A stretch of DNA of 64,000 bases from positions 1 through 64,000 of the forward strand of contig JAADVB010000055.1 in NCBI GenBank assembly GCA_023334545.1, written 5' to 3'. How positions within the stretch are numbered: the stretch's first letter is position 1; every line of letters starts with the position of its first letter. The notes under the pieces were generated by a model. That model was not told where the DNA came from, did no database searches, and saw nothing but the letters and a program-made list of their open reading frames with translations. A program made the position numbers and the translations under genes. This document shows, one piece after another, positions 1-13,559 of the stretch. This stretch comes from Salisapilia sapeloensis CBS 127946 (lineage: Eukaryota; Protista; Oomycota).

Positions 1-193
1 AGGATACTTGATGAACATGAAAGTGCTCCAGAACGCCGGCATCTAAAGTAAATAAAACCACCCTCCGTCCCTCGTCCTCTCTTTGCACATGAATTTCCGG
101 AACGCTGCTTGCAACTTCAATGATTGCACATAATTCAAGACGCAATCGGATCTAAGCGGAACGGCTCCAACTTCAAAAACCAAACGCCGAAGA

Positions 194-2203
194 ATGAGCT
201 CCGAGCGAGAGCGATCGGATGAGAGCTCGATGTTGGGCTATGAGCTCGCATTTGACAGAGCAGCTGAAGCCATTGGTCAGGCAGTGGACCAAAGTGAAGT
301 GTACATGACCGACTCGCAAAAGCTGCAGCTCTTTGCGCTGTACAAGCAAGCTTCAGAAGGCGACTGTGAGCTTCCCTTACCAAGTGAGTACTGACCAGAG
401 CGTTTAATTCATTTTCTGGAGATTTCTGTGTTGTCTTGACCGCAGTATACTAACACGTCAATCGTCATATAGGCGTATACCATCCAGTGGTATGTTAATT
501 GTGATGTGGAGGATATAAAGACGCCTGTAGAAACAGTATTTAAGCGTCTTCGTCCATCCTACTACAACCTAAGCATACGCATTCGTCAACTAACATTTTT
601 TTCTTAAAATGCAGGACCGAGCGAAATGGTAACGTGCAGGATACGACTTTAGTATAATCTTGGCAACTAATATATAAGTCTAGGAATGCGTGGAGACACT
701 TGCATGGCATGAACACAATCATTGCAAAGCGTCGATACGTTGTGAACGTTCTGGAGCTGCTTCCAAGCTTCCAGTTATCACCCGTCCGACAGCAAGAACG
801 ATCTTCGTCTTCTCCAGCTACAGACGACCAGTCGTTGGAATCGCCCCTCCGAAAAGAGCCATTCCCATCATCGTCCTACTTGTACACCTTGTGCCAAGTA
901 GGCTCAACTGTCGCACTTGTATTCGGTGCATTCTACGGATGGCTCCTTATCTGGCCATCACTATCGATTGAAATCCCACGCAACGTCAAGGACGCTACAG
1001 TGATGCCGATCGTCTGGTTTGGACTTGGCGGTCTTATCATGCTCACGCTGAAAGCTAACGTAAAGTCTATAATCACTTGAATACGTTTCTGACTCATCAT
1101 TGCATGGATACGGCTAATACGATCTGTGCTTTGACAGGTTCTCCATTGGAAACTCCTTGACGGTGAGCTCATGTGGCTGCCACATGTCCGGAAGCGTTAT
1201 CCGAGACGACAACGTCGACGTGGCCAGAGAGCTCCGAAAGTGCCAACGTTTGAAGAATTGGGTTTGACGTTGGTAAAAGAAGGAGAAGCAAGTGCAAATG
1301 GTGCTCTGGATATGTCCAACCCACGCCTCGAGCTTAGTCCCCCGGCAGGTGATCCCAATTCTACAACAATCGAATTGGAGTCAGGTCACATCCCCTTCCC
1401 GGTCGAGCAGGTACCGCTAGCATACCTATAGTGAAGATCATAAGAGCTCACTGTGTCAATGCGGCATAGACTGGCGACATGCACTTCCGAAAGTTTAAGG
1501 AGCCGCTGCCAGATCCAGCGAATCCATTGTTGGAGAAAATATCGACGATCATGGAGCATACTTTTGAGGAGTATGCGGCAATATACAGACAGCGACTGCT
1601 CTGCCTCAAGTAAGGCTACGTGTATCACATTAAAATCTGCCTTGCTAAAGTGTTTATGATAGAAATGACCTGCCCTACTTGATCAAGCGCTTTATTAATA
1701 CCGACTACATGGAGTATGTCGAGCACTCATTATTCGACAAGCGCAATCGCGTACGAGCTTGGAAGAATTGCTATTCATCTTGTCAGTTGTAGAACTAATG
1801 CACACGTTCTTAGGTCCTATACGTGTACGTCGTAAACAAATCCTTCTCGGACTTGGGCACTGTCATGGAGTACATTGTCTATCGACCTTCTAAAGAGGAC
1901 GAAAACGCGTAAGATCATGTCTAATCTACGTTCAAGTACCCCATAGAAAGACTGATTGGTGCTACTTGCGTAGGACGGAGATAAATCAGTCAGCTCGTAT
2001 GGTCATCAAGAGCGCATCTATAAATTGGTTCCGATCGCAGGTCTTACTCTAGTCATGTGTGCTACCTCTGTACTTCACTCAACTTGTCGTCATAGATTGA
2101 GCCACTTACTCAAACTTTCTACACCAAAGACGCAATGGCCGCTCGAGCATATTTGGTCGAAAGACTGGAAGAAGAATTCGGCCAGCTGCAACCAGCTACT
2201 TAG
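194..2203 (+). CDS. Spliced gene: acyl-CoA-binding (ACBP) domain + 2 TM helices + PRELI/MSF1-like lipid-transfer domain, ~455 aa
   Basis: Exons 194-383, 473-489, 615-628, 684-1059, 1138-1410, 1470-1609, 1663-1750, 1814-1908, 1974-2040 and 2096-2203. All introns are GT-AG and the phases sum to 1368 nt with no internal stop. The join rebuilds ACBP (KLQLFALYKQASEGDC..PLPSVYHPVDRAKWNAWRHLHGM). The C-terminus LPYLIKRFINTDYMEYVEHSLFDKRNRVLYVYVVNKSFS..MEYIVYRPSKEDENATEINQSA matches the PRELI pattern. Confidence 0.8.
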
Positions 2204-2324
2204 TCTACCTAGACTTGATTTCACTTCAACAGGAATATCATTCTAACCGCTTCGGGTCGTTATCCGTTTCAGATTTAATTTCAATAGGTTTCCATCAGTC
2301 CGATACCTACCACTTTGTCCTGAC

Positions 2325-5300
2325 ATGTCCAAAGTGCTAGAACAGCTCGTCGCTCGTGGCAGACGCGAGAGAAAGCCGACTGAGCAACGTGATGTCGCCT
2401 TTAGCCTGGCAGAGATCTCCACCACAGCAGAGCTGCATGACAAAATGGTAGCGAAAGGAGTTGTTCGATCTCTCATGACGCTCATTGTCAAGTCGACAGA
2501 TGAAGAGGCGTTACGACTATCATGCTTATGCTTAGCGAATATCGCGTCGACGGCCACAACTCGCGTCAAGATTGTTGAAGAGGCTGTGCTTCCGCATTTA
2601 ATAGAGTATATCAAGCAACCAGAATCAGACGCGATTGCTATACAGTATATGGCTATGGTACTTGGCAACTTGGCAGCAGAGCCTGAGAACCACGAGGAGA
2701 TCGCGGACAAAGGTGCGATCCAAGTGCTGGTGAAGCTTTTGGATCCAGAGCACATTCATATTAGTACCTACTGCGCCTTCGCTTTGTCGAACTTGGCGGT
2801 GAATAACGACCATCGACCAATTATCGTGGACGAAGGCGCTATACCTAGACTGATCGCAGTTGCTTGTTGTCGTGATATTGGGGCGCAGAAGCAGTCATTA
2901 GCTTGCTTGCGGGGTATCTGCATTAGTCCAAAGAACCGAGTCGTTGTCGTTAAAGAAGGGATTCTCGATCCACTTGTGCTCATGTCTCGAAGTGAGGATG
3001 CAGCCATCCAATGTGAAGTTGCGGCTGCCTTCTGTACTCTATCCGCGAATTCTGAAAACAAAGGCGAGATAGCGGATAGAGCCTTGCTCACTATTATTTC
3101 TATGAGCTTATCAGGAGATCCAGCTGTGGAAGAATTTGCCTGCAGCACCGTTGCGAATCTGATGGAGGTGCAAGAGCTGCATGCCAAGCTCTTAAAGGAA
3201 AATGGTCTGGCCTCCATCATGGCACTTGCTGTCGCAACGGACTTGAATACTCGATCCGAAGCTTGTCGATGCATCGCCAATCTAGCAGCAAACCAAGCCA
3301 TGCAGCCTGCATTAGTGAAAGAAGGAGTGCTCGCGTCTCTAGCGAACACTCTAGTGATTGACCATCATGTCTGCCAACGATTTGCAGCCTTAGCACTCGC
3401 AAACTTGTCTGTAACATCCGCGTATCAGTCTGAAATCGTTGGCCTTGGGACCATATCGCCATTGATCCAGCTAGCACAGGCATTCGACCGAGAGCTAGAG
3501 GCTAGACGGTATGCTGTTCTGGCCATTGCCAACCTAGCTGCTATGTCGGCCAACCACGCAGCTCTTTTGAAAGCTGGTTGCCTCCTCTCCCTCTTCTCAC
3601 TCGCTAGTACGGCCGATCGACTGAGTCAGTACTACGTCGCATGTGCTCTAGCTAACTTTTCGTCATGCGAAGACAACCACGCTAGACTTGTCGAAGAAGG
3701 TGGACTTCAGCCCATCATTACGCTCGCATGTTTGGACGACACTGACGTGCATCATCAAGCAGTTGCTGCGCTTCGAGGCCTAGCTGTTCTGGAAACGAAT
3801 CGTATTAAAATCGTACAGGAAGGTGGACTAGAACCTCTGGTGCACCTACTTGATAGTGATGACGTTGATATTCTTCGAGAAGTGTGTGCGGCTTTGTGCA
3901 ATCTCACCATGAGTGATGAAACCAAGTACGAAATCGCAAAGAGCGGGACGGTCCCGTTACTCATTTATCATGCCCAGTCCGATGATAAAGAGTTGGCAAA
4001 ACAAAGTTGTGCTGCACTTGCCAATTTAGCAGAGTTGGAGGAGAATCAGGAGAAAATCTGTATGGATGGTGGCGTACAGCCTCTTATTTCCATGATGCGG
4101 TCACAGTTCATTGAAGTACAGCGTGAAGCTGGGCGTGCGCTTGGAAACCTCTCAGCGTTTGAGCGCAACCACGACGTCATCGTTGAGCACGGCGGTCACC
4201 AGCTTTTAATCTCGTATCTACTTTCGCCAGACGTTGGCTCACAACGTGTCGGATCGCTTGGTATCTGCAATCTCGCAACGAATGCGAGCATGCGAGTGCT
4301 CTTGATGGAGAATGGAGCGATGGAGCCACTTATGTCCTTGGCCCGTTCAGAAGATGTGGAGCTAGAAATCCAGCGCTTCGCCATCTTAGCCATTGCGAAC
4401 CTTGCTACCTGTGTAGATAACCATGCCGCAATTGTTGAAGAAGGGTCCATCCCACTCCTGATATCACTTTCTGGTGCTCCGGATGAACAAGTCCGACAGT
4501 ATGCAGCATTCGCCTTAGTCAAGGTGGGATTAAATGCTGATCTTCGACAACTCTTGACGGAAGAAGGTGGTTTAGAACCGGTTCTTTTCCTAGCTAGGAC
4601 ACAGAGTAAAGAAATCCATCAAGATGTACTCCCAGCGATCTGCACCTTGTCGTTCGCCGATTCAAACAAATCGGACATTTGTCACAACGGTGGTTTGCCA
4701 CCGCTCGTGTCTGCCCTCGCAAACGCAGATGTCACGTTGCAGCGACTTGCTAGTTGTGCTATCGCAAACTTGGCTGAAGTCGTTGAAAACCAAGATAAGA
4801 TCGTCGAAAGTGGTGTCGTTTCCAGACTAGCTCAAGTGCTGAAGAATGGGCATGTGATCGTCCAAAGAGAAGCTGCGAGAGCAATCGGTAATTTGGCAGC
4901 AAATTGTGATTTCGCCGCGCTCTTCTTCCGGGAAGGCACAGTCACGCCGCTGCTGCAGCTATTTGGAAGCGAGGTCATCGATTGCCAACGCATGGCTGCG
5001 ATGGCACTGTGCAACTTGGCGACCAATATAGACAACGTACCCAAGATGCTATCTCAGTACGAGCTTCTGGAACCTATATTAGCCAGACTGGAAGAAGCCC
5101 TGGATCCACGATCACTCGCCGACAATGATGTCATCCGATATGCGCTCTTGATCTTGGCAAACCTCGCCGTGTCGGAAACCACACATGAAGTGCTCATTTC
5201 TAAAGCGCTGCCTCTGCTATCAGGGTACTGCAAGCATCGAGACGTAAAGTGTCGTCAATTCGCCGTCTTTGCGATCGGAAACCTATGCAGCAATCCATCA

Positions 5301-8300
5301 AATATTGAGGATATTGTCGGAGCCGACTGTCTGCCTCCGCTTGTGTCGTTTGCTTTTCCTGGTGACCCGAACGTGCAGTTCCAAGCAGTGGCAGCACTGC
5401 GAGGAATGTCGATCCATCAGAATGTTCGCCAACTAATCGTTCGACAAGGAGCGTTGGAGCCGCTTATACTTGCCGCATCATCCGAAAGCGTGGAAGTGCA
5501 GCGTGAGGTTGCTGCCACCTTGTGCAATCTGTCACTGAGCGAGGAAAACAAGCTGACAATGACTCGCGGTGGGTGCCTACCTCCTTTAATCGCACTGGCA
5601 AATGCCAGAGACAGCTATCGAGAACGTCACGCTGTGTGCGCCTTGGCGAACTTGGCAGAGATGGTCGAAGGACACTCCCACAAGAAAATGTTGGATGAAG
5701 GCATTCTCGCTACGTTGTATACTCTCGCTCCGACGCAAGACTTGGAGGTCAAGCGGCAAGTTTCGCGATGCATTGCTCTCTTTGCAGCAAAGCCAGCTAG
5801 CCAGTCGGCTTTGTTAAGAAGTAATGCGCTGAAGCATATCAGTGCTTTTACCCAAGAGCATGACGATATGATGTGCCAACGATTTGGTGTACTGGCTATT
5901 GGTAATCTTGCCGTGGATGAGAAGAATCACAAGGATCTATTCGACGAGGGTGCTGTGACTGCTCTCATGAGTGTGGAAAAGTCGACGGATATGGAAACTC
6001 GGCGTTCGCTTGCCTTTGCGTTGAATAATCTAGCTTCAAACGAAGAGAACAATATCCAAATCTCCAAACTTGGTGTTTTGCGAACCGTCATTTCTTTATT
6101 AAAAGATAAGGATAAGGATACGCACTTACAAGCATGTTTCGCATTACGACGGATGACGCTTGAAGCGAAGAATCGTACTCAAGCTGTGTCATTTGGTGCG
6201 TTGCCATCTCTTTTCAAGCTAGCAACTTCTGAAAATATCGAAGTGCAGAGGGAAGTGGCTGCTGCGTTGCGTAACATTTCTCTCAGTGAAGACAATAAGG
6301 TCTTTATGGTACTTAACGGAGCTCTTACACCACTCGTGACGCTCCTTCATTCCGGAGACACAGAAACTTCGCATCAGGCGTGTGGCGTCTTGGCGAATCT
6401 TGCAGAGGTCGTTGAGAATCAAGGACGCATGGTCAAGGAAGGGATTCTGCAACATTTGAAATTCGTGCTGCGTGGAAATAACCCTGATATCACTCGAGAA
6501 GCGCTTCGAGCGGTCGCAAACATGTCCGCTGAGTATGCGTATCTGACAGAGATCATATCTAGCGGAGGCCTCGGACCTCTACTCGCTGGTCTGTCGCTGC
6601 CTGACTTTTTAAGTCAACGCTATGCAGCTATGGGTATAGCAAACCTCACGACACACTCGGACAATATCACTCGCATTGCTCAGGAAGGTTGCATTCCGAC
6701 TTTGATCCATCTCGCAAGGCCTCTCGCTGCTGCGGACTTGGAAACGCAGCGGTATGCGACCTTTACACTTACGAACATGGCGAGTTCGAGGGCAATACAG
6801 CCTCAGTTGATTGAAGCGGAGATTATTCCGCTCTTGGTAGAGCTGCTCGGTCATCCAGACATGAGTCTACGCAATGCAGCAGCGTTTGGCATTGCCAACC
6901 TTGCTGCTTTCGTTGAAAATCATGACCTGCTTCTGCAGGTCAACATTAGCGACAGTAGTGAAGCGAACGTCTTGTTGGATTCGTTACTAGTCCTTGTAAA
7001 CAGCCAAGATCCCAAGTGTCAGTATCGAGCTGTCAGCGCACTTAGAGGTTTGTGTATCACTGACAGAGCTCGAAATGCCATTGTCCGGCGTGGCGGTCTA
7101 GCTCCTCTTTTAAAACTTACTGCGTCGGACGATATGGATGTACAGCAGGAAGTTCTAGCGTGCTTGTGCAATATCTCTCTCAGTGGTGCTCTAAGTGCTT
7201 GCGCGGACGATGTTGTAGATGCGTGTGCGATGGGCTCTCTTGTTTCTTTCCTTTGTTCAGCTGATGCAACCTATCGACTATTTGGAGCCGTCACGCTTGG
7301 AAACTTGGCTGGCAAAGTAGAACATCAGCAGGCTATTGTAGATGCGGATGCCGTTTCGCCTCTAGTGGAGCTTTCGAATCGTGTCGATTTGGAAACACAT
7401 CGGTGCATTGCACTTGCTCTTTGCAACCTCGCTTCCAACGTCAATCGGAGGCAGCTAGTAGAAGAGTTGGGTGGCATTGTGCCAATCATTCAATTAGCAT
7501 GTAGTGACAGTGCTGAGGACCAGCAAACTGCTGTCTCTGCTCTACGAGGGATATCCGATCGACCAGAAAGCCGGCTAAAAATCGTTACCGACGGTGGCTT
7601 AGAGCCACTTATACTTGGCTCAAAGTCGAAAGAAATTAATCTCGTTCGTGAAGTCTCACTCACCACCTACAATCTGTCCCTCGCCGAGGAGAACAAGATC
7701 AAAATCGCCACTTCCCCTTTGATGGGAGCAATGATCACCCTGATGCTTTCACCTGATCCGATCATCTCTAAATTTGCTTGTGCTAGTGTGGCGAACTTGA
7801 CTGAGAATAGAGAAACCCATAACTCGATTGCTGGACAACGTGGTCTGCATTTCTTTGTTGAGTTTCAACGTCATGCTAGTCAAGCAGAATCGGATTGTTT
7901 AGTTGTAGCTCAAGAGGCGGTTCGATGTGTTGCAAACCTAGCTTCAGACTATGCGCTACATGATACCCTGCTGGCCGATCGAGCGCATGAGCTTATTCTA
8001 AAGGCGCTACTTCCAAATGTCACGCCAGAAGTCAAGCTCTTCGCATCTATTGCCTTGTCCAACATCGTTTCGAATCCCGAAACGCATTCACGCATCTTAA
8101 AAGAGTCCGTCATACCGTGTCTGGTCGAGCTCATGAATGACATCGGGACGCCCTCGGTACGGAAGTTTGCTCTTTTAGCTAGCGGCAGTCTCCTCGGAGA
8201 CAGCAGTTCGCATGAACGATTTGTCGCGAGTGGAGCTATCAGTGCACTTACTCGAGGACTAGATTCGTCCAATGAGATGGAAATACGGCTTAATTCTGCC

Positions 8301-11300
8301 TTTGCGCTCGGAAAACTAGCAATGAACGAGGCTTTCCACGAACGCATCGGTGAAGAGAGCAAATACGGCCAGCCTTTAATTAATCTCGCCATTGACGCTG
8401 AAAAGTCCCGTCATCTTGCAGCACAAACGCAAGCTGTATCAGTGCTGCGTCGAATCACTCGTTCAGAGATCAATTGCGTAAAGATGATAGAGCTGCATGC
8501 GGACAATCTACTAGAGTCGCTTGTATATGCAATGCAACAGGATTGCGTCGAATCCCAGCGAGAGGCAGTGAGCTGTCTCTGCAACTTGACGCTTCCAACA
8601 GTGAACAAAGTACCTGTGGCAAAGGCATCGGATGGCTGTCGCCGTCTTCTTCTTTTGTGTATATCACAAGACATTGAAGTAGCTCGAAATTCTTGTGCTG
8701 CTTTGGCGAATGTATCCGAAGAAGCTGACTCTCATGCGTACATGGTTGACTTATTTGCCATGCCAGTTGCAGTCAAAGCCATGCGATCTCGTCATCTGCC
8801 TGTGTATCGGGAAGCAGCACGATGGACGTCTAATCTGTTGTCATCACCTGAATTTCATATCCTACTGCTGCAAGAAGAAGGCCTAAAGGCGTTGCTCCGT
8901 GTAGCTAAGGTGGAAGATCATGAGTGCCAGTACAGCACGGCTTTGTCATTCCATAAGCTGACATCCAACGAAGCGATGCACCCCGCCTTAATGGAAAACG
9001 ATGGTGTCGTTAAAACGCTGCATGCGCTTTTGACTGTTCCTGGGATGGACGTCCGACACCAGGCAGCGATAGCTCTCAAGTTCCTTACCATGAACAAAGC
9101 CAATAAACCGACGCTAGCTGAGGATGGCACCTTGCACTCACTTATTGCGCTCTTACGGAGCGATGATAGCACGCTGCAGTGTATTGGTGCAGCAGGCATT
9201 CGGCATTTAGTCCTCTATAACCCAGTCAAAACATCGTTTGTGCAAGAAGGAGGACTCGCGCCTATCTTCGCATGCTGTCATAAAGAGGATGACAGCATCC
9301 GCGTTCAATGCGCCGGTGCCATTGCCAATCTCAGCGAGAACGTTCCAAATCAAATTGAAATCGTAAAAGCTGGTGGACTGGACGCCTTGGTTGCTTTGAC
9401 GAATGCGAGCTATCATAGTGAAATAGCACAGCACACTAGTCGAAGTTTCGCAAATTTATCGGCGAACGGAGAGAACCAAATGGGCGTTTTCGCTCTTGCT
9501 GAACTCCGAGCCATCTTTACACTTGCATCCGTTGCTGTGAGCCGGAATGAAGAATTATGTGGGCGTGATGCTGCCATGTGCATTGGCAATCTCGCAATTT
9601 CGACGAAAGCACAGATCCAGATCGTCGAGTATGGAGGCTTGAGTCCCCTTACACAGCTACTTCAAAGCCCATATGAATCATGTCGACAGTATGCAGCGCG
9701 AGCAATGTACCGAGTCAGCGCTAATAGTGAGAATCAGCTTCGAATCGTCGATGCTGGTGCACTTGTTCCACTTGCTAGTCTCCTAAAAGAGTGGAGTGAT
9801 CCCGAGACGCAGCGTTATGCAGCCATGGCGGTATGTAACTTGTCTAGTAACGCTGCGAATGAGCACAGTGTGATGAAAGCAGGAGCGATGCAACCTTTGA
9901 TTGAACTCTTACGCTCCCCGCGAAGCGATTGTGCAAAGTACGCCTGCATGGCACTGTGTAACCTGACGCAGCATCCCGTGAACCAGATGCAGTTGGCTAG
10001 TTACGACGATGGCATTGATGCACTAGTGGATTTAGCTGAATCGACCAATACTGATTGCTGCCGAAACGCCAGTATGACGCTTGCTAATACTTCTGCGCAC
10101 AGGATGAACCGTATTGTTGTCGTTGAAAGACGGGCCTTGAGGCCATTACGAGCGTTGTGCTTTTCTCCTAATCTGGAATGTCAACGAAGTGCTGCACTAG
10201 CAATATACAACGTTTCTTGTGCACAAGCGAACCAAGTTGCGATCATCGAGGCAGGCATGGAAGCTGCGTTAGTGCGTTTGGCTGGATCCAATGATGGAGA
10301 CTGTAAACGATATGCAGTAATGACGATGTGCAATCTGGCCGCTAATGTCGAGACACGCCAAGCTGCAGCGCGAGGTGGAGGACTGCAGGCACTGATTCTA
10401 GCCTCCAAAGATGACGACGTGACCATTCGCAGATACGCTTGTATCGCGCTTTGTAACCTTGCCTGCGATACGCTTTTACAAGCCCAGATTGTCGTTCATG
10501 GAGGTTTAGCGCCAATTTTATCGATGGCAGAGTCCCGTCTTGATCTTGAAGAAGCGGATGGAGATACTTCAGCTGAAGCAGACGTCGAGTCACAGCGCTT
10601 TGGCATGATGGCTTTGTCCAACATGGCTGTAAACGAGTCAAATCATGAACCTATGCTACGTCGTGACGTGCTTCAAGTCGCTCTACGCCTCTCTCGGTCG
10701 GAAGATGAAGACTGTCGACAATATGCAGCATTTGCTCTCGCCAACTTTGCTGGTAATCCAGATCATTGTGACTTTATTGGCGAACAAGGCGGGTTGACAG
10801 CTTTGATCTCGTTGGCTCATTCGGAAGACGCAAACTCACACACATTGGCGATCTCTGCGATAAGACGAATGTGTCAATTCTCTCCTCCGAACCGAGGCAG
10901 GATCGTTCGAGGTGGAGGCTTGATACCGCTTACCATTGCAGGGTACTCGGAAGAACTTGAGACACAGAGAGAGGTCGCAGCAACCTTTTGTAACTTGTCA
11001 TTGAGTGATGAATTTCGCGTTGAAATTGTTACTCAAGGAGCCCTGCGGCCTCTCCTGTCACTTGCTCAGTCGCCAGACTTGGAAGTGTCGCGACAAGCAT
11101 GTGGCGCACTAGCCAATCTTGCCGAGCACGTTGATACGCATGAACAGTTTGTCCAGGAGAAAAGTGGAAACTGTTTCATTGCTTTATTGAAGCACCAGTC
11201 GATCGACATCCATCGTGAAGCTTCCCGTATCATCGCAAATCTGCTTTCAAGCTTCCAGAACCACATTGAAGTAATTGCGGAAGGTCTCCCAGGTCTCATT

Positions 11301-13559
11301 CGTCTAGGTCTATCGTTGGATGCAGAATGCCAATACAATGCAGCTCTGGCTCTCCGCAAGTTGACTCCAAACTTTTCAAGCCACCGCGGTATCATCTATG
11401 AAGGTGGCTTAAAGACGTTATTCTTTCTCATTCAGACGAAAGACTTGAACACACGCCGCCAAAGCATTTTGGCGTTGCGCGACCTTGCTTCAAACAATGA
11501 GCACAAGCGTAAGTATGTGGAAGAGGGTGGTATCCCAGCACTTATTATGTTTGTACGGGAGTCAGAGCCATCGTTACAATCTCCCGCAGTCGCAGCTCTT
11601 CGGCATCTTTCGTCTTGCTCTGATCATGCCGATATCAAGGACGAAATGGTGGCAAAAGGGGTCTTACGCCCCCTACTACGTTGTATGTCCAACAGCAGTG
11701 CGCGCAATCTTGACCTTCAAACTCAGTGCGCAGGCCTAGCTGCCAATCTATCCGAATTACTCTCGAACCAACCGAAGATGGTAGTCGAGGGCATTACACC
11801 ACCTCTGGTAGCACTGGTGTCCAATACGGAAAGCACGGAGATCCACCAAGATGTGAGTCGTGCACTGGCGAATCTCTGCTCTAACGAAGATAACCACGCT
11901 CTTGTCTACGCGCATGGTGCACTGCACTGCCTCATCAAACTAACGAACGCAAAGGACGAGGTCACACAGAGGTATGCTGCAATGGGCCTTCGCTTCCTCT
12001 CGGCAAACCCCCAGATCCGAGTGCATATCATTGAGCAGAACCTCCTTCCACCTTTCCTCGCACTCGCACAAAGTCCACTTTTAGACTACCAACGCACTGC
12101 TGCATCCGCCTTCTCTAGTTTCTCACTACACGAAGCGAACAAGCTCAAGCTCGTGCGTGACGGAGGACTGAGCCAAATACTATTGAGCTGTCAATATAAG
12201 GATCTTGAAGTCGTCCGTGACTGCACGTATGCCCTGGCGAACATCGCGGAGTCTGTAGAGCATCAGCCAGATGTTGTTCGTGCTGGGACTATTCCGATTG
12301 TATGCCAAGTGGCTGATGCGAGGCAAGATACACAGGTGCAACGAGACTGCGCTCGACTGTTGTGCTCTCTATCCATGACAGACTCTATTCGTCACGACTT
12401 GCTAGAGCAGCAAGCTTGCCAGACAGTCCTCGGACTAACACGCTCTTTTGATGGAGCGACGCAGCGTTTTGCGACACTGACACTATGCAATATATCCTCT
12501 TCATCAAACACAAAAGACAAGGAGCAGATTGTTGTCACTGAGAACGTCGTCCGTCCTCTCACACACCTCATTCGTTTCCCAGACGCCGAAATCCAGCGAT
12601 ATGCAGCATTGGGACTTGCATCGCTTGCATTAGGAGGGTATGGAAACAGTCGAATCCGTCTCATTGAAGACGGGGCTGTGCCTCCACTCATCGATCTACT
12701 TCGATATCCCACGTGCGATGTTCAGCTCTGTGGCTGTCTAGCGCTTACGTCACTTGCGATGGGTACGGAAGGCACTGTCAAGTCTGCTTGCATGCAGAAT
12801 GGGGTACTGCTACCTATGCTCGCACTACTCTCTTCGTCTGATTTGGACTGCGTTCGATGCGCACTCTATGGCGCTGGTGCCTTGGGTGAACATCGAGACG
12901 TGCTACTTGGACTATTAGACCTTGGGATCTTGCCCCAAGTCGTTGCACTCTGCTATAGGAGCGACATGGAGGTGCGGCGACACTGTGGATACATCCTGGG
13001 TCTTTACGCGGAACAGCAGACGGATTTCCATGACGACTTGAGTCGTGAAGGAGCTTTCGAAGCTTTGATTTCGCTCGCATCGACCGAAGACACGGAATGT
13101 CAGGAGTATGCCACCTTCTCCTTAGCGCACATTGCTTCCAATCGTGAATACCAAGTGCCACTCGTCACGAAAGGAGTCTTGTCTCCTCTTGTCGCTCTGC
13201 TGGAAGCACAAGCAGAACCGAGGCATTATGCTGGTCTTGCGCTCTTGAAACTCGCTGACAACTACGAGACACACGTACGCATTGCCGAAGCTGGAGGCGT
13301 ACAAGCTCTCTTGCGACTGGCTCGTGCTCGTGCGAGTGATGAAGAGCTGCAGTACAAGGCATCTCTGAGTCTCGGTCAGCTTGCAAGCCATGCGACGCAC
13401 ACTTTGAAGAAGATGAACAATGAGGAAGTGGGGGACGGTAAAATAGGCACTGGTGCGACCAAAATGGCACAGCTGACGGAGACGATGGCAGCACGTCGTG
13501 CCAAGGACCAGACTGCCAAGTACATTCAGGAAAAGGTGAATGAAGAGAGTGGTCGGTAG
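2325..13559 (+). CDS. Giant armadillo-repeat protein (Vac8-like annotation class), 3744 aa, single ORF
   Basis: Uninterrupted 11.2-kb ORF made almost entirely of ~41-42 aa ARM repeats (GGLxPL...QRxAAxALxNLA). Short charged C-terminal tail. Confidence 0.92.
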   Translation: MSKVLEQLVARGRRERKPTEQRDVAFSLAEISTTAELHDKMVAKGVVRSLMTLIVKSTDEEALRLSCLCLANIASTATTRVKIVEEAVLPHLIEYIKQPESDAIAIQYMAMVLGNLAAEPENHEEIADKGAIQVLVKLLDPEHIHISTYCAFALSNLAVNNDHRPIIVDEGAIPRLIAVACCRDIGAQKQSLACLRGICISPKNRVVVVKEGILDPLVLMSRSEDAAIQCEVAAAFCTLSANSENKGEIADRALLTIISMSLSGDPAVEEFACSTVANLMEVQELHAKLLKENGLASIMALAVATDLNTRSEACRCIANLAANQAMQPALVKEGVLASLANTLVIDHHVCQRFAALALANLSVTSAYQSEIVGLGTISPLIQLAQAFDRELEARRYAVLAIANLAAMSANHAALLKAGCLLSLFSLASTADRLSQYYVACALANFSSCEDNHARLVEEGGLQPIITLACLDDTDVHHQAVAALRGLAVLETNRIKIVQEGGLEPLVHLLDSDDVDILREVCAALCNLTMSDETKYEIAKSGTVPLLIYHAQSDDKELAKQSCAALANLAELEENQEKICMDGGVQPLISMMRSQFIEVQREAGRALGNLSAFERNHDVIVEHGGHQLLISYLLSPDVGSQRVGSLGICNLATNASMRVLLMENGAMEPLMSLARSEDVELEIQRFAILAIANLATCVDNHAAIVEEGSIPLLISLSGAPDEQVRQYAAFALVKVGLNADLRQLLTEEGGLEPVLFLARTQSKEIHQDVLPAICTLSFADSNKSDICHNGGLPPLVSALANADVTLQRLASCAIANLAEVVENQDKIVESGVVSRLAQVLKNGHVIVQREAARAIGNLAANCDFAALFFREGTVTPLLQLFGSEVIDCQRMAAMALCNLATNIDNVPKMLSQYELLEPILARLEEALDPRSLADNDVIRYALLILANLAVSETTHEVLISKALPLLSGYCKHRDVKCRQFAVFAIGNLCSNPSNIEDIVGADCLPPLVSFAFPGDPNVQFQAVAALRGMSIHQNVRQLIVRQGALEPLILAASSESVEVQREVAATLCNLSLSEENKLTMTRGGCLPPLIALANARDSYRERHAVCALANLAEMVEGHSHKKMLDEGILATLYTLAPTQDLEVKRQVSRCIALFAAKPASQSALLRSNALKHISAFTQEHDDMMCQRFGVLAIGNLAVDEKNHKDLFDEGAVTALMSVEKSTDMETRRSLAFALNNLASNEENNIQISKLGVLRTVISLLKDKDKDTHLQACFALRRMTLEAKNRTQAVSFGALPSLFKLATSENIEVQREVAAALRNISLSEDNKVFMVLNGALTPLVTLLHSGDTETSHQACGVLANLAEVVENQGRMVKEGILQHLKFVLRGNNPDITREALRAVANMSAEYAYLTEIISSGGLGPLLAGLSLPDFLSQRYAAMGIANLTTHSDNITRIAQEGCIPTLIHLARPLAAADLETQRYATFTLTNMASSRAIQPQLIEAEIIPLLVELLGHPDMSLRNAAAFGIANLAAFVENHDLLLQVNISDSSEANVLLDSLLVLVNSQDPKCQYRAVSALRGLCITDRARNAIVRRGGLAPLLKLTASDDMDVQQEVLACLCNISLSGALSACADDVVDACAMGSLVSFLCSADATYRLFGAVTLGNLAGKVEHQQAIVDADAVSPLVELSNRVDLETHRCIALALCNLASNVNRRQLVEELGGIVPIIQLACSDSAEDQQTAVSALRGISDRPESRLKIVTDGGLEPLILGSKSKEINLVREVSLTTYNLSLAEENKIKIATSPLMGAMITLMLSPDPIISKFACASVANLTENRETHNSIAGQRGLHFFVEFQRHASQAESDCLVVAQEAVRCVANLASDYALHDTLLADRAHELILKALLPNVTPEVKLFASIALSNIVSNPETHSRILKESVIPCLVELMNDIGTPSVRKFALLASGSLLGDSSSHERFVASGAISALTRGLDSSNEMEIRLNSAFALGKLAMNEAFHERIGEESKYGQPLINLAIDAEKSRHLAAQTQAVSVLRRITRSEINCVKMIELHADNLLESLVYAMQQDCVESQREAVSCLCNLTLPTVNKVPVAKASDGCRRLLLLCISQDIEVARNSCAALANVSEEADSHAYMVDLFAMPVAVKAMRSRHLPVYREAARWTSNLLSSPEFHILLLQEEGLKALLRVAKVEDHECQYSTALSFHKLTSNEAMHPALMENDGVVKTLHALLTVPGMDVRHQAAIALKFLTMNKANKPTLAEDGTLHSLIALLRSDDSTLQCIGAAGIRHLVLYNPVKTSFVQEGGLAPIFACCHKEDDSIRVQCAGAIANLSENVPNQIEIVKAGGLDALVALTNASYHSEIAQHTSRSFANLSANGENQMGVFALAELRAIFTLASVAVSRNEELCGRDAAMCIGNLAISTKAQIQIVEYGGLSPLTQLLQSPYESCRQYAARAMYRVSANSENQLRIVDAGALVPLASLLKEWSDPETQRYAAMAVCNLSSNAANEHSVMKAGAMQPLIELLRSPRSDCAKYACMALCNLTQHPVNQMQLASYDDGIDALVDLAESTNTDCCRNASMTLANTSAHRMNRIVVVERRALRPLRALCFSPNLECQRSAALAIYNVSCAQANQVAIIEAGMEAALVRLAGSNDGDCKRYAVMTMCNLAANVETRQAAARGGGLQALILASKDDDVTIRRYACIALCNLACDTLLQAQIVVHGGLAPILSMAESRLDLEEADGDTSAEADVESQRFGMMALSNMAVNESNHEPMLRRDVLQVALRLSRSEDEDCRQYAAFALANFAGNPDHCDFIGEQGGLTALISLAHSEDANSHTLAISAIRRMCQFSPPNRGRIVRGGGLIPLTIAGYSEELETQREVAATFCNLSLSDEFRVEIVTQGALRPLLSLAQSPDLEVSRQACGALANLAEHVDTHEQFVQEKSGNCFIALLKHQSIDIHREASRIIANLLSSFQNHIEVIAEGLPGLIRLGLSLDAECQYNAALALRKLTPNFSSHRGIIYEGGLKTLFFLIQTKDLNTRRQSILALRDLASNNEHKRKYVEEGGIPALIMFVRESEPSLQSPAVAALRHLSSCSDHADIKDEMVAKGVLRPLLRCMSNSSARNLDLQTQCAGLAANLSELLSNQPKMVVEGITPPLVALVSNTESTEIHQDVSRALANLCSNEDNHALVYAHGALHCLIKLTNAKDEVTQRYAAMGLRFLSANPQIRVHIIEQNLLPPFLALAQSPLLDYQRTAASAFSSFSLHEANKLKLVRDGGLSQILLSCQYKDLEVVRDCTYALANIAESVEHQPDVVRAGTIPIVCQVADARQDTQVQRDCARLLCSLSMTDSIRHDLLEQQACQTVLGLTRSFDGATQRFATLTLCNISSSSNTKDKEQIVVTENVVRPLTHLIRFPDAEIQRYAALGLASLALGGYGNSRIRLIEDGAVPPLIDLLRYPTCDVQLCGCLALTSLAMGTEGTVKSACMQNGVLLPMLALLSSSDLDCVRCALYGAGALGEHRDVLLGLLDLGILPQVVALCYRSDMEVRRHCGYILGLYAEQQTDFHDDLSREGAFEALISLASTEDTECQEYATFSLAHIASNREYQVPLVTKGVLSPLVALLEAQAEPRHYAGLALLKLADNYETHVRIAEAGGVQALLRLARARASDEELQYKASLSLGQLASHATHTLKKMNNEEVGDGKIGTGATKMAQLTETMAARRAKDQTAKYIQEKVNEESGR

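What the first reader, a model, noticed from the sequence alone, without database searches (positions are those of the whole stretch)
194..2203. Hidden ACBP-TM-TM-PRELI fusion: membrane-anchored acyl-CoA sensor plus lipid-transfer domain
Seen: ten exons join without a stop into ~455 aa, of which the ORF track shows only fragments. An N-terminal ACBP domain is followed by two hydrophobic helices (about 880-1050), a basic/linker region, and a C-terminal domain matching the PRELI/MSF1 module as in SEC14L1 (..LIKRFINTDYMEYVEHSLFDKRNRVLYVYVVNKSFS..YRPSKEDENATEINQSARMVIKS..IE..TQTFYTKDAMAAR). Established: PRELI/Ups proteins are START-like phosphatidic acid/phosphatidylserine shuttles; membrane ACBPs (ACBD5 type) act at organelle contact sites. 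Inference: a TM hairpin puts both lipid-binding domains on the same face, suggesting a contact-site lipid-transfer protein regulated or fed by acyl-CoA. I do not recognise this architecture from any described protein.
Basis: partly seen in the sequence, partly recalled or inferred. Interest (0 to 1): 0.8.

Follow-up and report, generated by a model that had tools for sequence, protein, structure and literature searches.

The report
Membrane-anchored ACBP–PRELI fusion protein gene
This oomycete has an expressed ten-exon gene for a membrane protein that joins an acyl-CoA-binding domain to a PRELI-type lipid-carrier domain; relatives such as Phytophthora share it and databases list it, but I found no paper describing it.

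Summary
Ten GT-AG exons (194-2203, + strand) give an open 455-aa frame.

- **RNA support:** Assembled RNA contigs from four runs (three samples) carry all nine splices exactly as modelled, including the 17-nt and 14-nt micro-exons.
- **Orthologue:** The protein aligns end to end with Pythium oligandrum Poli38472_005278. That gene has the same ten-exon plan, the same micro-exons and the same downstream neighbour.
- **Domains:** Orthologues pass Pfam thresholds for ACBP and PRELI. A predicted structure matches ACBP and Ups1/PRELID structures. It lies closest to PRELID2 and SEC14L1/real-time.
- **Topology:** All 16 full-length members have exactly two hydrophobic helices. The positive-inside rule places both lipid-binding domains in the cytosol.

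About 30 public proteins from Pythium, Globisporangium, Phytophthora, Plasmopara and Peronospora already carry both Pfam domains. The architecture is therefore catalogued, but no paper describing it was found. The window's own protein is in neither protein database searched.

PRELID1 R25 and K58 bind the phosphatidic acid headgroup. Here they are replaced by an invariant Pro and by Phe (Leu in the window), so the cargo is probably not phosphatidic acid bound the Ups1 way. The target membrane, the cargo and any coupling to acyl-CoA remain inference. The scan had not reported this gene on other DNA.

The parts
194..2203 (+). Whole coding region: 10 exons, 455 aa, ATG at 194, TAG at 2201-2203
   Evidence: Gene model. 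Spliced RNA contigs from 4 runs. End-to-end alignment to P0001 (39% identity, E 5e-117).
236..762 (+). ACBP domain (aa ~15-100), spread over exons 1-4
   Evidence: Exon 1 alone hits Pfam ACBP at E 2.1e-8, 34.7 bits against a 28.3 cut-off. The orthologue scores 75.8 bits. This stretch is 59% identical to P0001. ACBP structures match with TM 0.77-0.87.
473..489 (+). Micro-exon 2 (17 nt), within the loop between ACBP helices 2 and 3
   Evidence: Present in the RNA contigs (table 5c). Same size and phase in P. oligandrum, L001:6243-6259.
615..628 (+). Micro-exon 3 (14 nt), encoding D-R-A-K-(W) at the start of ACBP helix 3
   Evidence: Present in the RNA contigs (table 5c). Same size and phase in P. 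oligandrum, L001:6332-6345.
763..876 (+). Ser/Pro-rich, poorly conserved linker 1 (aa 101-138)
   Evidence: 23-46% identity to orthologues. pLDDT is below 50 in the orthologue model. Length varies between species.
877..1056 (+). Two hydrophobic helices (aa 139-167 and 178-198) with a short loop between them: a transmembrane hairpin
   Evidence: Kyte-Doolittle scans. Exactly two such segments in all 16 full-length members, with flanks mostly positive and loop mostly neutral or negative. Long helices in the orthologue model. The TM2 motif P..WF..G is nearly invariant.
1186..1242 (+). Polybasic stretch after TM2 (VRKRYPRRQRRRGQRAPK)
   Evidence: Read directly from the sequence. An RRRRRR run sits in the family consensus.
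1243..1365 (+). Conserved short helix plus beta-hairpin element before the PRELI domain; function unknown
   Evidence: Family consensus FLRxHGIxVVxQPE..PRLxLxLP. H261-275, E278-281 and E295-298 in the P0001 model. No Pfam hit.
1381..2182 (+). PRELI/MSF1-like domain (aa ~281-449), running from the end of exon 5 through exon 10
   Evidence: Exons 7 and 8 give collinear weak PRELI hits at profile positions 46-74 and 78-105. This stretch is 50% identical to P0001, whose PRELI hit scores 58.6 bits against a 27-bit cut-off. Foldseek against Ups1, PRELID1 and PRELID3b gives E 4e-8 to 1e-5. PRELID2 matches with TM 0.77-0.81. The family profile against PRELID1 gives E 2e-9.

Best explanation
Shown: nt 194-2203 is one expressed ten-exon gene. 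Its 455-aa product consists of a canonical acyl-CoA-binding (ACBP) four-helix domain, a flexible linker, a two-helix transmembrane hairpin, a polybasic juxtamembrane stretch, a small conserved helix/hairpin element, and a complete PRELI/MSF1 (Ups/PRELID-type, START-like) lipid-binding domain. It belongs to a family conserved in peronosporalean and pythialean oomycetes, with gene structure and neighbouring gene also conserved. Inferred: the hairpin inserts with a short luminal loop, so both lipid-binding domains face the cytosol from the same membrane, most likely the ER. The target organelle is not known. The ACBP domain sits on a 40-110-residue tether and captures long-chain acyl-CoA at the membrane surface. 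The PRELI domain sits on a shorter, partly structured arm and extracts or holds a membrane glycerolipid. Together they would link local acyl-CoA supply to lipid transfer or remodelling. The cargo is probably not phosphatidic acid bound in the Ups1/PRELID1 manner, because the two basic residues that hold the PA phosphate are replaced by Pro and by Phe/Leu.
For: One spliced mRNA with all nine splices is seen in 4 runs, and the open frame is uninterrupted. The product aligns end to end with P. oligandrum P0001. Exon sizes and phases are identical, including the 17-nt and 14-nt exons. The downstream 3744-aa ARM gene is syntenic at 72.7% identity. Pfam ACBP at 2.9e-21 and PRELI at 8.7e-16 occur in the orthologue, and the same pair in P0007, P0013 and P0022. 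By alignment, K32, K54 and Y73 of bovine ACBP correspond to K51, K73 and Y92 here. Two hydrophobic segments with the charge bias expected for cytosolic termini appear in 16 of 16 members. Domain identities are ACBP 59% and PRELI 50%, against 19-35% for the hairpin and linkers, which indicates selection on both domains. PRELID1 R25 aligns with the invariant Pro of KEPLPDP, and K58 aligns with an invariant Phe (Leu in the window). The roles of R25 and K58 are taken from PMC6408443.
Against: No ligand, localisation or topology has been measured. The orthologue model is only moderately confident, with mean pLDDT 67.8, and the first strand and helix of the PRELI domain fall below 50. The window's own protein could not be folded or scanned whole, so its domain calls rest on exon pieces plus orthology. 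No FFAT or other tethering motif was found in the linkers. The function of PRELI domains outside mitochondria (SEC14L1, PRELID2) is itself poorly defined. Characterised Ups/PRELI proteins work in the mitochondrial intermembrane space with Mdm35/TRIAP1, which a cytosolic domain could not use.
Confidence: 0.5

Rival explanations
1. The architecture is the same, but the PRELI-like domain is not a lipid shuttle. It would act as a lipid sensor or a protein-interaction or regulatory module that controls what the membrane-tethered ACBP does, or the reverse, without net lipid transfer between membranes.
For: The PA-binding pair R25/K58 is missing. The nearest relatives by structure and identity are PRELID2 and SEC14L1/real-time, and to my knowledge no lipid-transfer activity has been established for their PRELI domains. 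A domain fixed to a membrane on a roughly 85-residue arm cannot diffuse like Ups1.
Against: The fold retains the seven-strand sheet and long C-terminal helix that form the lipid cavity. The lid region (P..LIKRF) and the E.S..D..N strand are invariant in the family. Tethered lipid-transfer domains are common at contact sites.
Confidence: 0.25
2. It is a mitochondrial protein. In one version the hairpin sits in the outer membrane with both domains in the cytosol, mitofusin-like, and feeds ER-made phospholipid and acyl-CoA to mitochondria. In the other version both domains face the intermembrane space and work like a tethered Ups protein.
For: Every functionally characterised PRELI-family lipid carrier is mitochondrial (PMC6408443; PDB hits). 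Two-helix hairpins with both ends on one side are known in the outer membrane.
Against: The N-terminus is acidic (MSSERERSDESS...) and runs straight into the ACBP domain, so there is no presequence-like stretch. The PA determinants are absent. No targeting predictor could be run here. ACBP domains are not known from the intermembrane space.
Confidence: 0.15
3. Two adjacent genes, an ACBP-TM gene and a PRELI gene, have been joined by mistake in the model.
For: Some public annotations show only the PRELI half, as in Peronospora P0023-P0025, or lack parts.
Against: Single RNA contigs in four runs cross every junction at uniform depth. The frame stays open across all ten exons. At least 15 orthologues from different annotation projects carry both domains. 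The truncated public models are explained by intron read-through or skipped exons.
Confidence: 0.02

Closest known systems
Pythium oligandrum Poli38472_005278 and its Phytophthora, Globisporangium and Plasmopara orthologues (UniProt 'ACB domain-containing protein' or 'PRELI-like family'; for example PITG_13833 and PHYSODRAFT_314948)
   Same: Same domain order, same ten-exon structure with both micro-exons, and the same downstream neighbour. Identity is 39% overall, 59% in ACBP and 50% in PRELI.
   Different: The window's copy is the most divergent member seen and is missing from both protein databases searched. Its linkers are shorter. It has Leu rather than Phe at the K58-equivalent position and Phe rather than Tyr at the ACBP Y28-equivalent position.
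Ups1/PRELID1 and Ups2/PRELID3b (SLMO), the mitochondrial PRELI lipid carriers that work with Mdm35/TRIAP1
   Same: Same PRELI fold and family: Pfam PF04707, profile E 2e-9 to PRELID1, Foldseek E 4e-8 to 1e-5.
   Different: Those are soluble single-domain proteins of the intermembrane space. This one is an integral membrane protein with a predicted cytosolic orientation and a fused ACBP. R25 and K58 of the PA carriers are Pro and Phe/Leu here. Sequence identity is 13-20%.
PRELID2 and the N-terminal PRELI domain of SEC14L1/SEC14L5/real-time
   Same: Best structural and sequence neighbours of the C-terminal domain: TM by hit 0.77-0.81 and 24-26% identity for PRELID2, 21-23% identity for SEC14L1/real-time. 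As in SEC14L1, the PRELI domain is part of a multidomain protein.
   Different: There are no CRAL-TRIO or GOLD domains. PRELI is C-terminal here and N-terminal there. This protein adds a membrane hairpin and an ACBP domain.
ACBD4/ACBD5 and plant class II/III ACBPs (membrane-anchored acyl-CoA-binding proteins)
   Same: An ACBP domain held at a membrane surface on a flexible linker (review PMC7057175). ACBD5 and ACBD4 structures match the domain.
   Different: ACBD4/5 use a single C-terminal tail anchor and a FFAT motif, and plant ACBPs use an N-terminal helix. This protein has an internal two-helix hairpin, no FFAT found and a second lipid-binding domain. By sequence its ACBP is closest to the ACBD2/ECI2 domain, 2cqu, at E 1.5e-14.

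Membership tests
ACBP (Pfam PF00887) | Profile match above the curated cut-off | tested here: met
   Window exon 1 alone scores 34.7 bits against 28.3. Orthologue P0001 scores 75.8 bits at E 2.9e-21.
ACBP (Pfam PF00887) | Four-helix bundle fold | tested here: met
   In the P0001 model, residues 12-96 form four helices with pLDDT 85-96. Foldseek TM by target is 0.77-0.87 against ACBP crystal structures. This was tested on the orthologue, which is 59% identical in this domain.
ACBP (Pfam PF00887) | Acyl-CoA-contacting residues (bovine Y28, Y31, K32, K54, Y73; roles recalled from memory) | tested here: met
   By alignment, the window has F47, Y50, K51, K73 and Y92. Orthologues have Y at the first position and F at the second. 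Four of the five are kept. Binding itself was not measured.
PRELI/MSF1 (Pfam PF04707) | Profile match above the curated cut-off | tested here: met
   P0001 scores 58.6 bits against 27 over profile positions 5-140 of 157. P0007, P0013 and P0022 score 56-62 bits. For the window itself there are only collinear exon-piece hits at E 0.06-0.1, plus 50% identity to the P0001 domain.
PRELI/MSF1 (Pfam PF04707) | Seven-strand antiparallel sheet wrapped around a long C-terminal helix | tested here: met
   The P0001 model has E313-441 and H443-480. Foldseek gives PRELID3b, Ups1 and PRELID1 at E 4e-8 to 1e-5 and PRELID2 at TM 0.81. Confidence is moderate, and the N-terminal strand and helix are poorly modelled.
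Ups1/PRELID1 subfamily (phosphatidic acid carriers) | Basic pair R25 and K58 that bind the PA phosphomonoester (PMC6408443) | tested here: not met
   The profile-to-PRELID1 alignment puts R25 opposite an invariant Pro (KEPLPDP) and K58 opposite an invariant Phe. The window has Leu, in LLCLKN.
Ups/PRELI mitochondrial carriers | Intermembrane-space location and an obligate Mdm35/TRIAP1 partner | not testable with these tools
   There is no presequence-like N-terminus and the predicted orientation is cytosolic. No localisation or partner data exist.
SEC14L1/real-time family | PRELI followed by CRAL-TRIO and GOLD domains | tested here: not met
   Pfam finds only ACBP and PRELI in P0001, P0007, P0013 and P0022.
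ACBD4/ACBD5-type tethers | A single C-terminal tail anchor plus a FFAT motif that binds VAP | tested here: not met
   There are two internal hydrophobic helices followed by about 255 more residues. A crude FFAT scan found no candidate in the disordered linkers of 9 members.

The most novel reading that the evidence does not exclude
This family would be the first integral-membrane, cytosol-facing PRELI-domain lipid-transfer protein. It would be an oomycete lineage invention in which a tethered ACBP hands acyl-CoA to, or gates, a PRELI domain carrying a lipid other than PA. Acyl-chain supply would then be coupled to inter-organelle lipid transport within one polypeptide.
Probability: 0.3. Interest if true: 0.75.

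Novelty: new variant of a known kind. Interest (0 to 1): 0.55.

Why it matters
PRELI-domain carriers are understood only as soluble mitochondrial shuttles that work with Mdm35/TRIAP1. What the domain does elsewhere, in SEC14L1 and PRELID2, is an open question. A conserved, expressed protein that pins a PRELI domain to a membrane next to an acyl-CoA-binding domain gives a simple system for testing non-mitochondrial PRELI function. It also allows a test of whether acyl-CoA availability is coupled to lipid transfer.

In the searches run here the family was found only in oomycetes, which include major crop and animal pathogens. To my knowledge an oxysterol-binding-protein-type lipid-transfer protein (ORP1) is already a fungicide target in this group, and one search lists a paper on that. 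A lineage-restricted lipid-handling protein is therefore of practical interest.

On the annotation side, the window's copy is missing from the protein databases searched. Several public models of the family are broken at the micro-exons or introns.

Tried and rejected
1. **Two separate genes.** Rejected by the RNA contigs and the orthologues.
2. **Truncated PRELI domain.** My first reading was that the domain lacked its first hairpin. That was wrong: the Pfam alignment on the orthologue starts at FRKFKEPLPDP, so the domain is complete.
3. **Exhaustive HMMER search with the exon-4 piece.** Only one hit, P0001, at E 5.4e-4.
4. **Profile and PRELI-only word-index searches.** These found no member outside Pythiales and Peronosporales. 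This is weak evidence of absence, because two AFDB cluster hits with 37-38% identity to the PRELI part may be fragmentary orthologues from other oomycetes.
5. **ESM Atlas searches.** No cluster carries both domains.
6. **Second AF2 run on the C-terminal 237 residues alone.** It gave a worse model, pLDDT 60.2, and could not say whether the conserved pre-PRELI element packs on the domain.
7. **FFAT scan.** Nothing in the linkers.
8. **Literature.** No paper holds ACBP and PRELI as whole words, and none holds the gene identifiers. Pei et al. 2022 on P. sojae ACBPs is not held and could not be read.
9. **Window's own spliced protein.** It could not be given to the fold, Pfam or database tools, because it has no single reference and I did not type it in.

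Full report
**1. The observation**

Translating the three forward frames of nt 151-2300 shows coding pieces that change frame at GT..AG boundaries. Ten exons join into 1368 nt, which is 455 codons plus TAG with no internal stop. They are 194-383, 473-489, 615-628, 684-1059, 1138-1410, 1470-1609, 1663-1750, 1814-1908, 1974-2040 and 2096-2203. The nine introns are 53-125 nt long, with GTRAGT-like donors and YAG acceptors.

Four public RNA runs (three samples, one study) hold 51-54% of the sampled words of the stretch. When laid on nt 1-3000, each run gives one contig of 1380-1459 nt. These contigs run from 188/194 to 2249/2294 and skip exactly the modelled introns. The 29 letters they carry between 384 and 683 are exon 2 (17 nt) followed by exon 3 (14 nt). 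Word depth is 80-116 in exons and zero in the bins that lie wholly within introns 1-2. The gene is therefore one spliced, expressed mRNA. The contigs start 0-6 nt before the ATG.

**2. Independent confirmation from relatives**

An exhaustive HMMER search with the exon-4 piece found a single representative, P0001. This is Pythium oligandrum Poli38472_005278, 486 aa. The window's own protein is absent from that library.

The spliced model aligns with P0001 over residues 5-449 against 2-481, at 39% identity and E 5e-117. By segment, identity is 59% in ACBP, 50% in PRELI and only 19-35% in the hairpin and linkers.

I rebuilt the exon chain that reproduces P0001 exactly from its genomic locus. It has ten exons of 181, 17, 14, 469, 285, 140, 88, 95, 67 and 105 nt in the same phases. 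The window's exons are 190, 17, 14, 376, 273, 140, 88, 95, 67 and 108 nt, so both micro-exons are conserved.

The next gene downstream in Pythium encodes a 3703-aa protein. Its first 1950 aligned residues are 72.7% identical to the window's 3744-aa ARM ORF at 2325-13559. The gene pair is therefore syntenic.

**3. The family**

Word-index searches with P0001, with a 28-sequence profile and with the C-terminal 232 residues returned about 30 proteins. All come from Pythium, Globisporangium, Phytophthora, Nothophytophthora, Plasmopara and Peronospora, or from unnamed Logan and metaclust entries. Most have PF00887 and PF04707 precomputed. Their source names include 'ACB domain-containing protein', 'PRELI-like family' and 'Acyl-CoA-binding protein 3'.

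Several public models are defective:
- P0029, P0031 and P0032 read through the intron after '..VEQ', which is the position of window intron 5.
- PITG_13833 and PHYSODRAFT_314948 lack the linker and first helix.

Two AlphaFold DB cluster representatives match only the PRELI part at 37-38% identity. They may be fragmentary orthologues from other oomycetes, but their organisms are not shown. No ESM Atlas cluster carries both domains.

**4. Domain identity**

*ACBP.* Exon 1 alone passes the Pfam ACBP cut-off, and P0001 scores 75.8 bits. The closest solved ACBP by sequence is the ACBD2/ECI2 domain, 2cqu, at E 1.5e-14. By alignment the window keeps Y50, K51, K73 and Y92. These correspond to bovine Y31, K32, K54 and Y73, whose roles I recall from memory. 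Phe sits at the Y28 position.

*PRELI.* P0001 scores 58.6 bits for PRELI against a 27-bit cut-off, covering profile positions 5-140 of 157. Three further members score 56-62 bits. The window's exons 7 and 8 give weak, collinear PRELI hits.

*Predicted structure.* An AlphaFold2 model of P0001 built on the family alignment has mean pLDDT 67.8. It shows:
- a confident four-helix ACBP domain;
- two long helices at 160-197 and 203-225;
- a helix plus beta-hairpin at 261-298;
- a seven-strand sheet with a long C-terminal helix at 313-480.

*Fold searches.* Foldseek against the PDB ranks PRELID3b-TRIAP1, Ups1-Mdm35 and PRELID1-TRIAP1 first, at E 4e-8 to 1e-5. ACBP structures follow, and other START-like domains (Aster, Lam4) come only at about 1e-3. 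Against Swiss-Prot models, PRELID2 is best (TM by hit 0.77-0.81, 24-26% identity). Real-time and SEC14L1 follow at 21-23% identity, then Ups and SLMO at 13-20%. A family profile of the PRELI part hits PRELID1 at E 2e-9.

**5. Topology**

All 16 full-length members have exactly two hydrophobic 19-residue windows. The loop between them is 11-24 residues and is neutral or acidic in all but one member. The flanks are mostly basic, including an RRRRRR-type run after the second helix. Under the positive-inside rule both termini are cytosolic, so ACBP and PRELI are on the same side. This is a prediction, not a measurement.

**6. Cargo**

PMC6408443 states that K58 and R25 of Ups1/PRELID1 hold the phosphomonoester of PA, and that K58 is the key determinant of PA specificity. 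In the profile alignment, R25 falls opposite the invariant Pro of KEPLPDP. K58 falls opposite an invariant Phe, which is Leu in the window.

The family therefore fails the defining test of the PA-carrier subfamily. It keeps the lid segment (P..LIKRF) and the E.S..D..N strand. Its lipid is unknown.

**7. Mechanism**

My best reading is a membrane-anchored protein, probably on the ER, with two cytosolic lipid-binding heads. The ACBP head sits on a long flexible tether and concentrates acyl-CoA. The PRELI head sits on a shorter arm and extracts or holds a glycerolipid. Together they would couple acyl-chain supply to lipid transfer or remodelling, possibly at contact sites.

The gene, domains and conservation are shown. 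The orientation, organelle, ligands and coupling are inferred.

The rivals are:
- the PRELI domain acts as a sensor or regulator rather than a carrier;
- the protein sits on the mitochondrial outer membrane or faces the intermembrane space;
- the model wrongly joins two genes, which is already refuted in practice.

No FFAT motif was found in the linkers with a crude scan, so an ACBD5-like VAP tether is not supported.

**8. Novelty**

No paper in the searchable library holds ACBP and PRELI together as whole words. Neither of the two papers holding both PRELI and oomycete mentions this protein, and none names the gene identifiers. The ACBD review PMC7057175 does not list this architecture. A 2022 paper on P. 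sojae ACBPs, cited, could not be read and may list it.

The architecture is thus catalogued by automatic annotation but, as far as I could check, undescribed. I class it as a new variant of known kinds. Its interpretation is partly supported, with the novelty claim trimmed and the function left open.

Earlier notes of this scan on the micro-exons (s1-314987) and on the ARM ORF (s1-314632) agree with what I tested. The scan had not reported this gene on other DNA.

Noticed in passing
window 2325-13559 and L001:8242-14034: The 3744-aa intronless ARM-repeat ORF just downstream is 72.7% identical over its first ~1950 residues to the gene that follows the P. oligandrum orthologue. The two genes form a conserved pair with an intergenic gap of only ~120-200 nt.
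   Followed up: partly
P0029, P0031, P0032, P0021 (PITG_13833), P0014 (PHYSODRAFT_314948): Public gene models of this family are often wrong. Three read through the intron after '..VEQ' and one also reads through a later intron. Two older Phytophthora models omit the linker and the first transmembrane helix, and the Peronospora models keep only the PRELI half.
   Followed up: partly
window 188-194: All four RNA contigs begin 0-6 nt upstream of the ATG, so the assembled 5' UTR is almost absent. Whether this reflects the real start site or assembly trimming is unknown.
   Followed up: no
window ~1243-1365 (aa ~236-275); P0001 261-298: A conserved helix plus beta-hairpin element (FLRxHGIxVVxQPE..PRLxLxLP) lies between the polybasic stretch and the PRELI domain. 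It has no Pfam match. Whether it packs on the PRELI domain, for instance where Mdm35/TRIAP1 binds in the mitochondrial carriers, could not be decided from the models.
   Followed up: partly
AFDB clusters A0A3R6WJU7 (251 aa) and A0A397CJL0 (145 aa): These PRELI-only entries are 37-38% identical to the family's C-terminal domain, far above ordinary PRELI proteins at 13-26%. They may be fragmentary orthologues in other oomycete lineages. Their organisms are not shown.
   Followed up: no
window 2310-2463: A low-depth (2.7) RNA contig in run X1 covers the start of the ARM gene. This suggests the ARM gene is transcribed at a much lower level than the ACBP-PRELI gene in these samples.
   Followed up: no
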